Assembly (NCBI RefSeq): GCF_000143415.4 | Contig: NW_003314278.1 | Location: 1,624,362-1,688,361, forward strand | Source of the DNA: Selaginella moellendorffii | Taxonomy: Eukaryota > Plantae > Lycopodiophyta | Length of the DNA: 64,000 nucleotides | Direction: 5' to 3' | In this document: piece after piece, positions 22,274 to 26,961 of the stretch | How positions within the stretch are numbered: position 1 is the first letter of the stretch | Layout: every line of letters starts with the position of its first letter | Notes under the pieces: model-generated | Told to the model about the DNA's origin: nothing | Databases searched by the model: none | Seen by the model: only the letters and a program-made list of their open reading frames with translations | Position numbers and translations under genes: made by a program

Positions 22274-23767
22274 ATGTCGGTGGACAGTAGGAATGAAGTT
22301 CATATGGTGGTGCTTCCATATCCTGCACTAGGCCATCTTCTTCCCTTGATCCATCTTGCAACAAAACTGGCTACAACAGGGATCATCGTCACACTGCTCA
22401 ATGTGAACAGCATCCATGAGAACCTCTCCCGGCAGTGGAGGTGCCCGGATGGGATGGATATCAGACTGGAGCAAGTGCATTGTGACATCTTCATTCCTTA
22501 TGGCATCGATGCCAAGGCACTGAAAGACACGGACGGGCTGCTCGAGTCTCTGGAGAGGTTGCAAGCTCCAGTAGAGGAGCTGGTGAGGGAGATGCAACCG
22601 CCTCCATGCTGCATCATTTCCGACTATTTCATGCGCTGGGCGGTGGGAATCACAAAGAAACTTGGCCTCAAAGTCGTCACGTTTTGGCCTGGAAATGCTG
22701 CCTGGAGCTCCATCCACCACCACACTCAAATGCTCGTCTCCAGTGGGGACGCGTTCCAAGGTCAGCTACAAAACTAGATTTTTTTTTTTCTTGCATGATT
22801 TTGATCGAGCAATCTAGGCCTCGACGAGAACAAGCTCATTCGCTACGTCCCAGGTCTCGACGCTTTCAAGTGCCGCCACCTCCCGAGCTACTTCCGGAGG
22901 AAGCTGGTAGGATTCATTCTTGAATTTTTTAGTGTCTCAGCAGACCGCATGAAGGATGCCGACTGGATCCTGGTGAACTCCATCTCGGAGCTGGAGACCC
23001 ACGCCTTCGATGCGATGCAGGGAGCTCTGGCCAACAAGAACTTCGTGTCTGTGGGTCCGCTCTTCCCATGCCACACCAGCCCGCGGGTGAGCCTCCGCGA
23101 CGAGAAGAGCGAGTGCCTGGAATGGCTCCACACCCAGGCCACAAGCTCTGTGCTCTACATCTCGTTCGGGAGCTTGTGCCTGTTTCCCGAGCGCCAGATC
23201 GTGGAGCTCGCGGCCGGGCTGGAGGCGAGCAAGCAGCCGTTCCTCTGGGCGGACGTCCGGCACGAGTTCGTCAGCAGCGAAGCTCTCCGGGGCTTCGCCG
23301 AGCGATCGAGGCCGAGGGGGATGGTGGTCTCCTGGGCGCCGCAGCTCCAGGTCCTGGCACACCACTCCATCGCCGGATTCCTCTCCCACTGCGGCTGGAA
23401 CTCGGTCCTGGAGAGCATCTTCTATGGCGTGCCACTGCTGGGCTGGCCGTGCCACACCGAGCAGAGCATGAATTGCAAGCTCGTGGAGGACTGGAAGATC
23501 GGGCGGCGGCTCTCGGATGATCAGGACGTGGCGCGCGGGCGAGTGGAGGAGGTAATCCGGGATTTCTTGGAAGGGCAGGGCATGGGCGAGATCCGGGCCA
23601 GAATGGCGGCGCTCAGGAGCACGGTGCGCTCCACGACCGACCAAGGGGGAACCTCTCACGGAAACCTCAAGAGATTCGTTGACGCGGTCAATGTGTCCGC
23701 CATAGCTGGCACCACTTGGCATGGCACGAGCCGCCCATGTGGCAGCCCTAAGAACGACGCCACGTAG
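22274..23767 (+). CDS. UDP-glycosyltransferase (family 1); exons 22274-22760, 22818-23767
   Basis: PYPALGH catalytic His, CIISD, PSPG box WAPQLQVLAH..FLSHCGWNS..EQ; GT-AG phase-1 intron. Confidence 0.93.
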
Positions 23768-23827
23768 CCAAAGCCACGTGGCTGTTCAGTTTGTTTTAGT
23801 AACGGGGTTAATTAACTTTAACCATTG

Positions 23828-25049
23828 CTAGTTTAACTCCAAGAGGTTTTGCGCAAAGAGGCGCTTGTGCACCCAATACACGATCAAATCCGCCGTGAGT
23901 TTCTTCTCGTCGATCAAGAATGGCTCCACGGTGCTGGGAGGTGATCCATAGGCAGACACCGAAAATCCTCTAGCACCTTTTTGTTCCAAAAGTTTTGAGT
24001 GTCGATTTTGAGTGCAAAATGGCAGAATCCATGCACGTACCTTCCAAGCTCGCGTCTGGGAAGTAGGCCCAGAATGTGTATGGAATGCCGAGCTTCGAGA
24101 AAGAGCCCCTTAGCTGCGATTGCAAAGTGGTGATTGGCAAGGATATCGCGATCTCAAGAGGAGACGAACCTGGTCGTTCTCGAAGCAAACTTCTACGTCG
24201 GCTAGGTTCTCTTCCTTCGCCAGTTTTGCTTGGAGACGCGGAGCGACGTCTTCTACCATGAGAGCTGGATAAGTCTTGGCTGCGGGCTTCTTTGGCTTTG
24301 GCTTTGGCTTTGCTGCGGGCTTTTCCGGCTTTTCCTTTGCCGGGGGAGGAGGAGGAGCCTCCTTGCCTGTGTTTTGCGAGCACACGAATGAACACGAATG
24401 AACTAGCACGAGACATGGAAGAACTTGTATCAAACCTGGGGCAGACTCCGCTACGATGAGCTCGTTGTTGAAGCCACCGGTACCATCGGATGCCATCGGA
24501 GAGTCCGGCGAGTGCATCCACTGGCCATCCACGATGAACTTGTACTTGTATGATCCCGGAGCTAGCTTCTGGAAACAATTAGACCCATGACAGTCTAATT
24601 GCAAGAACTTCGAAGTAGAACTTACTTGCTTGATCTGAAATGTACCATCCGGGCTCTTCTCAAGAGGGACTTGCTTTTGCCACTCGAGGAAGTCGCCGGT
24701 GAGCAGCACCTCGGAAGCTTGGCCCTTCCAAGCAAAGATTATATCCTGTGTCACCACTGTACGTGTCTTCCATCGCACGCACGCACTGGCATCAGCTGTA
24801 TGATGGACCAAAACTTCCTCGCAAAGTTCTAGACTTACATGTGGAAGTGGAAGTGGATGGCCCGTCCGCTACGCTCGCACGCAGCGATTGTATGCTCCTC
24901 GCCTCCTTTCTTTCTGGCAAACCAAAGCCCTTCGAATGCCGCAGCTCGAATCTGAGTAGTGTGCAGCGGCACGGCCTGATGAGCTGCGTAGCCTCGTGCG
25001 GACTAGCAAAGTACGTCAATCTGCTGCAAGCGGTGGCAGCCATAGCCAC
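23828..25049 (-). CDS. NdhV: Plastid-type protein: transit peptide + CBM48 (AMPK-beta-like glucan-binding) domain + NdhV/DUF2996 domain
   Basis: CBM48 motifs EVLLTGDFLEW and LAPGSYKYKFIVDGQW. NdhV-like LMVEDVAP..FENDQLRGSF..IPYTFWAYFP..GARGFSVS.YGSPPSTVEPFLIDEKK..YWVHKRLFAQ. Six exons with GT-AG introns; first acceptor uncertain. Confidence 0.85.
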
Positions 25050-25470
25050 ACGAGCTTCGAGGCTGGAGCTGGAGCTCCACCTCCACCTTTACGAGATAAG
25101 TCTGCACTTCCAAGTGGCAACATGTTAGCCACACTCCCAAATCAGCATTTCAGTTTATTAACCTCGTCATTACCAGACTGGTACCCAATCCAGAGGACTG
25201 GGAAATCCATCTCAGCCCGTTAGTCACGTCGAAACAAAACATCTTAGTTGCTGTGGTCCCCTTGGGATTTCCTGGCATTGATATGTGACGGTGCTTTGCT
25301 GCAAACCAGCAGCCAGCTTGTTTGCACGGTCACCGCAGAGAAGCTTGAGGCTTACCTCTTGTGTGGGATTGCAGCATGAATTCACAGTCGTAGCTAAAGT
25401 TCTAAACATCCAGCGCCAAAGGTACGCAAGCTTCTTCTCTCCCAGAGTTTGACGAACTCTTCTTCCAGCC

Positions 25471-26961
25471 ATGGGTGCTACACCACAAGATCAAACCGCA
25501 CACGTTGTTCTCGTCCCATACCCGGCTCAGGGTCACATTCCACCGATGATCCATCTCGCGCGAAAGCTAGCTGCCAACGAGATCATCGTCACGCTGGTTA
25601 ACGTGGACAGCGTCCACAAGATGCTCCTCAAGCAATGGAGCTGCCCACCGGGATCGGACATCCGGCTGGAGCAAGTCGAGTGCGGCCTCAAGCTCCCGGC
25701 CGGGGTGGACGCGTCGTGCCTCGAGAACCCGGAAGCTCTCTTTGACGCAGTTGACAGCCTCAAAGCTCCGGTGGAGGAGCTCGTACGTGAGCTCACGCCA
25801 ACTCCTTGTTGCATCGTTGCCGACTTCTTCCTTGGCTGGCCCCTCGAGCTGGCCAGGACGCTAGGCACCGGTTCCGCAATCTACTGGCCTGGAAACGCAG
25901 CATGGAGTTCACTCCACCACCATATGAAGCTGCTCGAGGCCCACGGCGATCTCTTCTGCCAAGGCAAGCCAAAGTTCTTGTCAGTAGTAGTCAACCAAGT
26001 TTGTGAAATCCATGCAGGAGAGAGGGAGGAGGACAGGATCATCACGTACATCCCTGGAGTTCCCGGCCTGGAGTACGGTGATCTTCCGGAGTACTTCAAG
26101 CGAAAGCTCGGGAGCCCGAGTCGCCGGCTTCTCTTCGACTACGACCAGGATCGCATGAAGCACTGCGAGTGGATCCTCGTCAACAGCATGGCGGAGCTGG
26201 AGCCCGAGACGTTCCACGCGATGCAAGCGGCGCTGCCAGCCAGCAAGTTCGCTGCGATCGGGCCACTCTTCCCAGTCTCCCACCACGAATCGCCAGCAGC
26301 GCTCAAGGGAGTGAGCCTCCGAGACGAGGAGCATGGCTGCCTCAAGTGGCTCGACACGCGCGCCGAGAGCTCCGTGCTCTACGTCTCGTTCGGGAGCATC
26401 AGCGTTCTCTCGGAGGATACGTTCCAGGAGATCGCCGCGGGGCTGGAGGCTAGCGAGCAGGCGTTTCTCTGGGTGAATCGCGAGGATCTGGTGAAGAGGA
26501 GCGCCACTCACGACGAGTTCTACGCGGGGTTTCTGGAGAGGACGCGCGAGCAAGGAATGGTCGTGTCGTGGGCGCCGCAAGTCCGAGTGCTAGCGCACTC
26601 CTCCATCGGAGGATTTCTCTCGCACTGCGGCTGGAACTCGACGCTGGAGAGCATCTGCTATGGCGTGCCACTGCTGGGATGGCCGTGCCACTCGGAGCAA
26701 AGGACCAACGCCAAGCTGGTGGAAGAGGACTGGCGAGTGGGGAAGAGACTGTGGCGGCGAGGCGATGGAGACACGGTGACCCGGGGTGTCGTGGAGCAGC
26801 GGATTACTGAATTCATGAGTGGAATGGACAAGGAGGAGATATGGGCGAGAGCGAAAGATCTCAAGAATGTGGCCCGCGCTACTGCCAATCCAGGCGGGAA
26901 CTCCCACGAGAATCTGGCAACGTTTGCGCGAGCAGTGAAGACGATGACGATGGGAGACTAA
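25471..26961 (+). CDS. UDP-glycosyltransferase, paralog of the 22274 gene (probable GC-AG intron 25964-26017)
   Basis: PYPAQGH and PSPG box WAPQVRVLAH..HCGWNS..EQ. Confidence 0.93.
   Translation: MGATPQDQTAHVVLVPYPAQGHIPPMIHLARKLAANEIIVTLVNVDSVHKMLLKQWSCPPGSDIRLEQVECGLKLPAGVDASCLENPEALFDAVDSLKAPVEELVRELTPTPCCIVADFFLGWPLELARTLGTGSAIYWPGNAAWSSLHHHMKLLEAHGDLFCQGKPKFLSVVVNQVCEIHAGEREEDRIITYIPGVPGLEYGDLPEYFKRKLGSPSRRLLFDYDQDRMKHCEWILVNSMAELEPETFHAMQAALPASKFAAIGPLFPVSHHESPAALKGVSLRDEEHGCLKWLDTRAESSVLYVSFGSISVLSEDTFQEIAAGLEASEQAFLWVNREDLVKRSATHDEFYAGFLERTREQGMVVSWAPQVRVLAHSSIGGFLSHCGWNSTLESICYGVPLLGWPCHSEQRTNAKLVEEDWRVGKRLWRRGDGDTVTRGVVEQRITEFMSGMDKEEIWARAKDLKNVARATANPGGNSHENLATFARAVKTMTMGD

What the first reader, a model, noticed from the sequence alone, without database searches (positions are those of the whole stretch)
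23828..25049. NDH subunit NdhV carries an inserted starch/glycogen-binding CBM48 domain
Seen: one gene encodes a transit peptide, a complete CBM48 with its aromatic residues (GDFLEW, YKYKFIVDGQW), a Pro/Lys linker and an NdhV/DUF2996 domain. The 24110-24811 ORF links CBM48 and the start of NdhV even unspliced, so the fusion is not a gene-model artefact. Known: NdhV is a loosely bound subunit of the ferredoxin-binding module of photosynthetic complex I, and the Arabidopsis and cyanobacterial forms I know have no CBM. Inference: a physical link between plastid glucan status and cyclic electron flow, for example starch sequestering NdhV or tethering granules to thylakoids.
Basis: partly seen in the sequence, partly recalled or inferred. 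Interest (0 to 1): 0.78.

Follow-up and report, generated by a model that had tools for sequence, protein, structure and literature searches.

The report
NdhV subunit with starch-binding module
This spikemoss gene encodes NdhV, a small helper of the chloroplast NDH electron-transport complex. The protein also carries an intact starch-binding module that is found from early streptophyte algae to ferns but in no seed plant sampled. That hints at an untested link between starch and cyclic electron flow.

Summary
Window 23828-25043 (minus strand) holds a six-exon gene. It is identical to Selaginella moellendorffii LOC9639981 isoform X2 (295 aa).

**Architecture:**
- a disordered N-terminal presequence;
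- a complete CBM48 (PF16561, 86 bits);
- a Pro/Lys linker;
- a DUF2996 domain (PF11210, 57 bits).

**Transcript evidence:** spliced contigs from four studies join the CBM exons to the DUF2996 exons.

**NdhV identity:** the DUF2996 part matches only the NdhV chain of cyanobacterial NDH-1L. This holds by sequence (E 6e-14) and by fold (TM 0.80).

**Distribution:** an exhaustive profile search found a small family of 211 representatives.
- On the tree, eukaryotic members form one clade.
- Fusions run from Chlorokybus and Klebsormidium through zygnematophytes, bryophytes and lycophytes to ferns.
- Ginkgo, Taxus and the 120 best-scoring angiosperm proteins lack the CBM and nest among the fusions.
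- So the CBM is probably ancestral in streptophytes and was lost in seed plants.

**State of the CBM:** its four glucan-contact residues are kept in essentially every fusion. The CBM is as conserved as the NdhV domain.

**The CBM as an exon cassette:** the CBM sits on a two-exon, in-frame cassette. Annotated isoforms of Diphasiastrum skip exactly this cassette.

Glucan binding, NDH association and any regulatory link are inferred, not shown. The scan found this before on the other haplotype copy (s1-374938). I found no paper describing it.

The parts
24839..25043 (-). Exon 1. It holds the start ATG (25043-25041) and about 68 residues of presumed chloroplast presequence ending in an S/T repeat. 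It ends in phase 1.
   Evidence: Searches give the gene model, which equals P0001. Contigs cover 24841-25114. pLDDT is below 50 for residues 1-67. N-terminal pairwise identity among orthologues is 0.27.
24626..24756 (-). Exon 2, the first half of CBM48 (includes W94). An alternative in-frame acceptor at 24795 would add 13 residues (308 aa form).
   Evidence: Contigs end at 24756, and a loose end fits the 24756 acceptor. Pfam PF16561 covers it. Marchantia paleacea has the same intron position.
24436..24568 (-). Exon 3, the second half of CBM48 (K122, W129, N146). Exons 2+3 total 264 nt and form a phase 1-1 cassette.
   Evidence: The joint 24568/24626 appears in all four runs. Skipping exons 2+3 leaves an open 207-aa frame.
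24170..24366 (-). Exon 4, the Pro/Lys/Ala linker (residues 153-186) and the first helix and strand of DUF2996.
   Evidence: Joints 24365/24435 and 24113/24170 are seen. The linker has low pLDDT and helix 189-206 is modelled. Linker length among orthologues is 34-163 aa.
24041..24113 (-). Exon 5, the central strands of DUF2996.
   Evidence: Joints are; the model is.
23828..23976 (-). Exon 6, the C-terminal part of DUF2996 with the K271-K272 pair, plus the stop TAG at 23830-23828.
   Evidence: Pfam PF11210 on this exon alone gives E 4e-10. The joint 23974/24039 is in four runs.
23700..23827 (-). 3' untranslated region, at least this far.
   Evidence: The 1335-nt contig of run X6 reaches 23700 and runs over the end of the stretch laid.

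Best explanation
This is the Selaginella orthologue of NdhV, the loosely bound subunit that helps ferredoxin dock on the chloroplast NDH complex. The form found here appears to be ancestral for streptophytes: presequence, CBM48 alpha-glucan-binding module, flexible Pro/Lys/Ala linker of variable length, and NdhV (DUF2996) domain.

**Shown here:**
- the architecture;
- a single spliced transcript;
- homology of each domain to its solved counterpart;
- retention of the four glucan-contact residues and of the basic pair that touches ferredoxin;
- the distribution from Chlorokybus to ferns;
- absence of the CBM in seed plants;
- the two-exon, in-frame nature of the CBM cassette.

**Inferred:**
- The protein enters the plastid.
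- Its C-terminal domain sits beside NdhS and NdhI as in cyanobacteria.
- Its N-terminal module binds starch or soluble alpha-glucan.
- A substoichiometric, exchangeable activator of ferredoxin-dependent plastoquinone reduction is therefore partitioned between glucan and NDH, or holds NDH-bearing stroma thylakoids near granules.
- NDH-dependent cyclic electron flow is thereby tied to carbohydrate status.

Seed plants lost the cassette. In at least one lycophyte, splicing may produce forms with and without it.
For: **Gene model and transcript**
- The model equals P0001.
- Spliced joints appear in contigs of four studies, and one contig bridges the CBM and DUF2996 exons.
- Transcriptome-derived orthologues (Trinity ORFs P0015 and P0016, Klebsormidium P0043) show the same fusion.

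**NdhV domain**
- Pfam scores for both domains are above cut-off.
- The DUF2996 part hits 6khi_V (Tlr0472, NdhV) at E 5.7e-14.
- The domain model matches only 6khi_V and 6l7o_V: TM 0.80, rmsd 2.1 A over 104 columns.
- Arg122-Lys123 of T. elongatus NdhV contact ferredoxin (PMC7021789). They align with K271-K272.

**CBM48 domain**
- The model lies on the AMPK beta1 CBM 1z0m_B at TM 0.94, rmsd 0.9 A.
- AMPK beta1 W100, K126, W133 and N150 are the critical glucan-contact residues (PMC4032982).
- They correspond to W94, K122, W129 and N146. K122 and W129 are kept in all 23 aligned fusions. W94 is kept in the 21 whose model reaches it. N146 is kept in 22 of 23.
- Mean pairwise identity is 0.59 for the CBM, 0.60 for DUF2996 and 0.29 for the linker.

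**Family and phylogeny**
- The exhaustive profile search gave 211 representatives.
- Eukaryotes form one clade (100/97). Seed plants form a nested clade (97/95).
- Holding all fusions together as one clade costs 14.4 lnL, p-AU 0.045.

**Taxa and cassette**
- The 120 best angiosperm hits carry PF11210 only.
- Marchantia paleacea has the same intron positions.
- Diphasiastrum isoforms skip exactly the cassette.

**Known biology of NdhV**
- It is transient and substoichiometric, and it stimulates Fd-dependent PQ reduction in a dose-dependent way (PMC7021789; PMC4916593).
Against: - No binding, localisation or complex-association data exist for any fusion protein.
- The moss PSI-NDH proteomics did not look for it because NdhV had 'no record' (PMC11629750). 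Presence in NDH of a non-seed plant is therefore unproven.
- AMPK L146 and T148, which also affect glycogen inhibition of AMPK, are not kept (T and G here; alignment).
- The tree has only 110 columns and is poorly resolved inside the eukaryote clade. The AU result is marginal, and the group was named after a first tree.
- Arabidopsis At2g04039 itself was not retrieved.
- Representatives are clustered at 50% identity and the word searches are incomplete. A second, stand-alone DUF2996 gene in Selaginella is therefore not strictly excluded.
- A CBM-less transcript (P0037) groups with Closterium. Haptophyte-labelled DUF2996 proteins exist in lineages thought to lack plastid NDH.
Confidence: 0.6

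Rival explanations
1. The protein is NdhV, but its CBM48 no longer serves glucan binding. It acts as a protein-protein anchor, for example holding the otherwise loosely bound subunit on NDH or PSI. Later chloroplast-specific subunits took over that role in seed plants, allowing loss of the cassette.
For: - CBM48 of AMPK beta also makes protein contacts. Binding of the debranching enzyme to beta1 residues 68-123 is independent of the glycogen-binding residues (PMC6274970).
- NdhV is easily lost from NDH.
- Seed plants gained extra NDH subunits (PMC11629750).
Against: - All four glucan-contact residues are kept from Chlorokybus to ferns. A pure protein-docking role would not obviously require that.
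- The long, variable, low-confidence linker (34-163 aa) suits a tether to a distant partner rather than a fixed interface.
- AlphaFold gives no confident interdomain packing (pTM 0.43).
Confidence: 0.15
2. In non-seed streptophytes the protein is mainly a starch-granule or glucan-metabolism scaffold, comparable in logic to PTST proteins. Its DUF2996 domain recruits a partner other than NDH. The NDH role of DUF2996 in seed plants and cyanobacteria would not carry over.
For: - DUF2996 proteins occur in records labelled Diacronema lutheri and an unnamed MMETSP alga (P0044, P0046). To my knowledge haptophyte plastids lack NDH.
- DUF2996 proteins distinct from NdhV exist in thylakoid-less cyanobacteria (PMC12038448).
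- No proteomic detection in moss NDH has been reported.
Against: - There is a single eukaryotic clade with seed-plant NdhV nested in it, and no second paralogue was found that could supply NdhV.
- The ferredoxin-contact basic pair is kept.
- Domain identity to angiosperm proteins is 55-57%.
- Green-algal hits outside streptophytes are Pyramimonas and Nephroselmis. Nephroselmis plastomes carry ndh genes; for Pyramimonas this rests on my own knowledge.
Confidence: 0.12
3. The fusion is an artefact: two adjacent genes or two transcripts merged by gene prediction.
For: - Short introns 2 and 3 happen to be in frame, which could mislead an ORF-based reading.
- Some database models of relatives are plainly wrong, for example Closterium P0038 with a retroelement N-terminus.
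Against: - Spliced contigs from four studies carry all four joints, and one contig spans the CBM and DUF2996 exons.
- The same architecture occurs in more than 20 proteins, including de novo transcriptome ORFs.
- Marchantia has the same intron positions.
Confidence: 0.02

Closest known systems
NdhV (DUF2996, PF11210): Tlr0472 of Thermosynechococcus elongatus (PDB 6KHI/6L7O chain V), Sll0272 of Synechocystis, At2g04039 of Arabidopsis
   Same: The C-terminal 110 residues share the same Pfam family. The sequence match to 6khi_V is E 5.7e-14. The predicted fold matches at TM 0.80. The basic pair is at the ferredoxin-contact position. The domain lies in the same clade as seed-plant proteins.
   Different: It carries an N-terminal CBM48 and a long Pro/Lys linker between presequence and NdhV domain. 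No described NdhV has a carbohydrate-binding module.
CBM48 of AMPK/SNF1/SnRK1 beta subunits (PF16561; PDB 1Z0M, 4YEF, 2F15)
   Same: Identity is 34-38%. The model superposes at rmsd 0.9-1.4 A. The W, K, W and N glucan-contact residues are kept.
   Different: There is no C-terminal AMPKBI domain (PF04739 was not hit, and the fold search of the C-terminal domain found no AMPK beta match). The likely location is the plastid rather than the cytosol. The partner domain comes from photosynthetic complex I.
Plastid CBM48 proteins of starch metabolism: SEX4 (3NME/4PYH), LSF1 (8J5D), PTST family
   Same: It is a plastid-directed protein with a CBM48. Sequence hits are LSF1 at E 1e-12 and SEX4 at E 1e-6. 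The logic is the same: a CBM brings a non-enzymatic or enzymatic partner to starch (PTST: PMC4339375, listed).
   Different: There is no phosphatase domain and no helical region other than the two helices of the DUF2996 domain. The CBM is N-terminal, not C-terminal as in PTST (the PTST layout is from my own knowledge). The attached domain belongs to electron transport, not glucan metabolism.

Membership tests
NdhV / DUF2996 (PF11210) | Pfam PF11210 match above the gathering score | tested here: met
   57.1 bits against a cut-off of 27, residues 187-292 covering profile positions 5-119 of 120.
NdhV / DUF2996 (PF11210) | Homology in sequence and fold to an NdhV chain seen in an NDH-1 structure | tested here: met
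   6khi_V at E 5.7e-14. Foldseek found only 6khi_V and 6l7o_V, at TM 0.80 and 0.75-0.80.
NdhV / DUF2996 (PF11210) | Two consecutive basic residues at the ferredoxin-contact site (Arg122-Lys123 in T. elongatus; PMC7021789, PMC12038448) | tested here: met
   K271-K272 align with them. The position holds K/R-K/R in 17 of the 23 aligned fusions.
NdhV / DUF2996 (PF11210) | Orthology to the functionally studied plant NdhV (At2g04039) | tested here: inconclusive
   There is one eukaryotic clade (100/97) with seed plants nested in it (97/95), including a Zostera protein named NdhV. The Arabidopsis sequence itself was not among the rows returned.
NdhV / DUF2996 (PF11210) | Physical association with the NDH complex; accumulation dependent on NdhS | not testable with these tools
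   This needs BN-PAGE, cross-linking or proteomics. The moss study did not search for it.
NdhV / DUF2996 (PF11210) | Chloroplast targeting | not testable with these tools
   No targeting predictor was available. The N-terminal 68 residues are S/A/R/T-rich, unconserved and disordered in the model.
CBM48 (AMPK1_CBM, PF16561) | Pfam match above the gathering score and a complete beta-sandwich | tested here: met
   86.1 bits against a cut-off of 26.8. pLDDT is above 90 over residues 70-152. TM is 0.94 and rmsd 0.9 A to 1z0m_B.
CBM48 (AMPK1_CBM, PF16561) | Glucan-contact residues W100, K126, W133 and N150 (AMPK beta1 numbering) | tested here: met
   They correspond to W94, K122, W129 and N146 here. 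They are conserved in all fusions that cover them, apart from one N-to-A change.
CBM48 (AMPK1_CBM, PF16561) | Measured binding to starch, glycogen or cyclodextrin | not testable with these tools
   This requires a binding assay.
AMPK/SnRK1 beta subunit | C-terminal AMPKBI domain (PF04739) that bridges the alpha and gamma subunits | tested here: not met
   There was no PF04739 hit. The C-terminal domain model finds no AMPK beta chain.
PTST (PROTEIN TARGETING TO STARCH) | Coiled coil followed by a C-terminal CBM48 (layout from my own knowledge) | tested here: not met
   The CBM is N-terminal. The only helices in the model are the two of DUF2996.

The most novel reading that the evidence does not exclude
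Plastid starch or soluble glucan reversibly captures NdhV through its CBM48. This sets how much of this limiting ferredoxin-docking factor is available to NDH. Carbohydrate sink status would then directly gate NDH-dependent cyclic electron flow and chlororespiration in streptophyte algae, bryophytes, lycophytes and ferns. Skipping of the two-exon cassette would be a developmental or environmental switch between a glucan-responsive and a free form. Seed plants would have fixed the free form.
Probability: 0.2. Interest if true: 0.85.

Novelty: new variant of a known kind. Interest (0 to 1): 0.68.

Why it matters
NdhV is the exchangeable, rate-enhancing subunit at the ferredoxin site of photosynthetic complex I. 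How NDH-dependent cyclic flow is regulated is still poorly understood. A conserved glucan-binding module on this subunit, across all non-seed streptophyte groups sampled, gives a concrete and testable route from carbohydrate status to electron flow.

It would also explain why NdhV was reported as having 'no record' in the moss PSI-NDH study. The orthologue is annotated there as an AMPK glycogen-binding-domain protein. Finally, it dates a clean domain loss to the seed-plant stem.

Tried and rejected
1. **AMPK/SnRK1 beta relationship.** Foldseek aligned the whole model to full-length AMPK beta chains over about 217 columns. I asked whether the whole protein is related to these subunits. The extra columns do not superpose (rmsd above 20 A). 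The DUF2996 domain alone finds no AMPK beta chain, and PF04739 is absent, so I rejected this.
2. **Plant NdhV in solved structures.** None is deposited. Spinach NDH lacked NdhS, NdhT and NdhV.
3. **Genomic loci for Diphasiastrum.** Exact look-ups of P0005 and P0171 found nothing. I used Marchantia paleacea instead.
4. **Last word search.** I used a profile of CBM-less forms to name Arabidopsis NdhV and to look for stand-alone genes in non-seed plants. Only the best 120 of 415 hits were listed, all angiosperm, so it settled neither point.
5. **ESM Atlas look-up.** Scores were 0.80 or lower, which is uninformative.
6. **Taxon-name literature search.** The search combining NdhV with taxon names was swamped by the taxon names.
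7. **Gene-model artefact.** Rejected on the RNA contigs.

Full report
**What is in the sequence**

Reading the minus strand of 23700-25200 gives a gene with five short GT..AG introns.
- The exons are 25043-24839, 24756-24626, 24568-24436, 24366-24170, 24113-24041 and 23976-23828. The stop is TAG at 23830-23828.
- A second in-frame acceptor at 24795 would add 13 residues, giving 308 aa.
- The 295-aa translation is identical to a database protein named 'uncharacterized protein LOC9639981 isoform X2 [Selaginella moellendorffii]' (P0001).
- A 98% identical protein, P0002 (LOC9631897), is most likely the other haplotype copy. That reading rests on my knowledge of this assembly, not on a test here.
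- Only one copy lies in the window.
- The gene sits between two UDP-glycosyltransferase ORFs.

**Domains**

- Pfam gives AMPK1_CBM at residues 74-153 (86.1 bits, cut-off 26.8) and DUF2996 at residues 187-292 (57.1 bits, cut-off 27). Exon-wise scans had already shown both.
- AlphaFold2, on an alignment of 23 fusion proteins, gives two confident domains: residues 70-152 and 187-295, mostly above pLDDT 90.
- Residues 1-67 are below pLDDT 50, and the linker 153-186 is low. That linker is 12 Pro, 9 Lys and 7 Ala out of 34 residues.
- The CBM part superposes on the AMPK beta1 glycogen-binding domain 1z0m_B (TM 0.94, rmsd 0.9 A over 82 columns) and on the CBM of SEX4.
- A separate model of the C-terminal 110 residues matches only two chains in the PDB at E below 0.001. 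Both are NdhV in cyanobacterial NDH-1L: 6khi_V (TM 0.80, rmsd 2.1 A) and 6l7o_V.
- By sequence the same chain, Tlr0472, is the best PDB hit of the whole protein (E 5.7e-14).

**Is it one transcript?**

Contigs of four runs from four studies were laid on 23700-25200.
- They carry joints that skip exactly introns 2, 3, 4 and 5, each with GT..AG on the minus strand.
- One 1335-nt contig runs from exon 2 through exon 6 into the 3' UTR. It has a 6-nt deletion and a few other letters, so it is the P0002-like copy.
- Contigs with no mismatch cover exons 2-3 and exons 4-5-6 of this copy.
- Contigs ending at 24756, and a loose end, support the 24756 acceptor. One contig shows an out-of-frame 24766 joint.
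- Some contigs retain intron 3, which is in frame.
- No contig joins exon 1 to exon 4. Contigs show presence, not absence.
- De novo transcriptome ORFs of other species show the same fusion.

The gene-model-artefact reading is therefore rejected.

**Who else has it**

*Word searches.* These found PF16561+PF11210 proteins in Diphasiastrum, Marchantia paleacea, Calypogeia, Ceratodon, Physcomitrium, Adiantum, Mesotaenium and Spirogloea. They found PF11210-only proteins of about 200 aa in angiosperms.

*Exhaustive search.* An hmmsearch with a profile of the DUF2996 domain, over 1.84 billion representatives, returned only 211 proteins at E of 0.001 or better and 30 at 1e-30 or better. My own CBM HMM marked which of them carry the module, and cluster look-ups named them.
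- Further fusions occur in Chlorokybus atmophyticus, Klebsormidium subtile, Closterium and Sphagnum.
- Ginkgo, Taxus, many angiosperms, Pyramimonas and Nephroselmis have no CBM. One of the angiosperm proteins is a Zostera protein named NdhV.
- The nearest outgroups include a DUF2996 protein of Synechococcus PCC 7336.
- The 120 best hits of a last word search were all angiosperm and all PF11210 only.

*Tree.* A careful tree of 43 domains places all eukaryotes in one clade (100/97). A seed-plant clade (97/95) is nested among the fusions; a 93-row tree agrees.
- Forcing all fusions into one clade, as an ancient-paralogue scenario would need, costs 14.4 log-likelihood units (p-AU 0.045).
- That rejection is weak. 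There are only 110 columns, and the group was chosen after the first tree.

*Gene structure.* Marchantia paleacea has the same five intron positions, with the CBM on two exons.
- In Selaginella those two exons total 264 nt between two phase-1 introns, so removing them keeps the frame.
- In Ginkgo, the conserved S/T motif that ends exon 1 is followed directly by the linker.
- In Diphasiastrum, one locus tag has three annotated products: one with the CBM (320 aa) and two that lack precisely that segment (238 and 212 aa).

*Simplest history.* The module was gained once, at or before the base of streptophytes. Whether the ancestor of all green plants had it cannot be told from this tree. The cassette was then lost once on the seed-plant stem. 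A CBM-less transcript that groups with Closterium (P0037) is either another loss or another skipped isoform.

**Does the module look functional?**

- W100, K126, W133 and N150 of AMPK beta1 are the critical carbohydrate contacts. Changing W100 or K126 abolishes glycogen binding (PMC4032982 and PMC6274970).
- Their counterparts here are W94, K122, W129 and N146. They are kept in every fusion whose model reaches them, apart from one N-to-A change.
- Mean pairwise identity among 21 fusions is 0.59 for the CBM, 0.60 for the NdhV domain, 0.29 for the linker (34-163 residues) and 0.27 for the N-terminus.
- The module has therefore been under the same constraint as the NdhV domain since the streptophyte radiation.
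- AMPK L146 and T148 are not kept.

**Does the NdhV part look functional?**

- Arg122-Lys123 of T. elongatus NdhV extend the ferredoxin interface. NdhV is transient and substoichiometric, and adding it raises Fd-dependent plastoquinone reduction in a dose-dependent way (PMC7021789).
- These residues align with K271-K272. The pair is basic in most fusions.
- NdhV is easily lost from the complex, and its accumulation depends on NdhS (PMC4916593).

**Mechanism proposed**

*Shown:* the two-domain protein, the flexible tether and the conserved contact residues on both ends.

*Inferred:*
- plastid import;
- docking of the C-terminal domain beside NdhS and NdhI;
- binding of the N-terminal module to starch or soluble alpha-glucan.

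NdhV is limiting and exchangeable. Glucan capture could therefore lower or localise NDH activity, or the tether could hold stroma thylakoids at granule surfaces. I put about 0.9 on 'NdhV orthologue with an ancestral CBM48', about 0.7 on real glucan binding, and about 0.2-0.3 on a regulatory coupling.

**Rivals**

- The module is a protein anchor only.
- The protein is a starch scaffold that does not work at NDH.
- The fusion is an artefact.

The second rival draws some support from DUF2996 proteins in records labelled Diacronema lutheri and an unnamed MMETSP alga, and from non-NdhV DUF2996 proteins in thylakoid-less cyanobacteria (PMC12038448). Against it stand the single clade, the kept ferredoxin pair, and the green-algal hits outside streptophytes. 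Those hits are Pyramimonas and Nephroselmis. ndh genes are documented for Nephroselmis and some other prasinophyte plastomes in PMC4194372. For Pyramimonas I rely on my own knowledge.

**Novelty**

- No paper in the library holds NdhV together with CBM48, starch-binding or related terms.
- Only nine papers hold DUF2996, PF11210 or At2g04039, and none concerns a fusion.
[quoted passage not shown] The moss orthologue found here is named an 'AMP-activated protein kinase glycogen-binding domain-containing protein'.
- The architecture is visible in precomputed Pfam annotations, so it is a new variant of a known subunit rather than a new kind of thing.
I treated it as a lead and tested the claims independently.

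**Limits**

- No targeting predictor was available.
- No Arabidopsis sequence was in hand.
- The rest of the Selaginella genome could not be searched for a second DUF2996 gene.
- The run contigs cannot show rare isoforms.

Noticed in passing
Diphasiastrum complanatum proteins P0005, P0171, P0027 (locus tag O6H91_04G031500): One gene has three annotated products: 320 aa with the CBM48, and 238 aa and 212 aa that lack exactly the CBM segment. This suggests cassette skipping in a lycophyte.
   Followed up: partly
window 24367-24435 (intron 3): Several contigs in runs X1 and X2 run unspliced through intron 3. It is 69 nt, in frame and without a stop. Retention would add 23 residues between the CBM and the linker.
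   Followed up: no
window 24766/24839: One contig of run X7 uses a third acceptor that skips 72 nt. This would put exon 2 out of frame and is probably a minor unproductive splice.
   Followed up: no
window 25471-26961 (+) and 22949-23767 (+): The gene is flanked by a 496-aa UDP-glycosyltransferase ORF and by a 272-aa UDPGT ORF. Both match PF00201. They look like members of a local UGT cluster.
   Followed up: partly
P0044 (record labelled Diacronema lutheri) and P0046 (MMETSP transcript): These are short DUF2996 proteins that group with green-lineage sequences. They come from a haptophyte-labelled record and an unnamed alga, lineages not known to me to have plastid NDH. They could be contamination, a relic of gene transfer, or an NDH-independent role.
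   Followed up: no
P0037 (203 aa, Logan contig of 919 nt): This is a presequence-linker-DUF2996 protein without a CBM that groups with Closterium. It is either a separate loss of the module or a skipped isoform in a zygnematophyte.
   Followed up: no
P0038 (Closterium sp. NIES-53, 670 aa): The gene model joins about 380 N-terminal residues, which look retroelement-derived by eye (not scanned), to the CBM48-DUF2996 protein. This is a likely annotation artefact.
   Followed up: no
P0205, P0211, P0228 (Melia, Citrus, Theobroma): PF11210-only proteins of about 200 aa are named 'Glyceraldehyde-3-phosphate dehydrogenase A' in source records. This is apparently a propagated misannotation of NdhV.
   Followed up: no
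P0111-P0140 (proteins of 230-370 aa from metagenome sources): This is a well-supported clade of long DUF2996 proteins with large N-terminal extensions and no CBM48. Their origin and extension are unknown.
   Followed up: no
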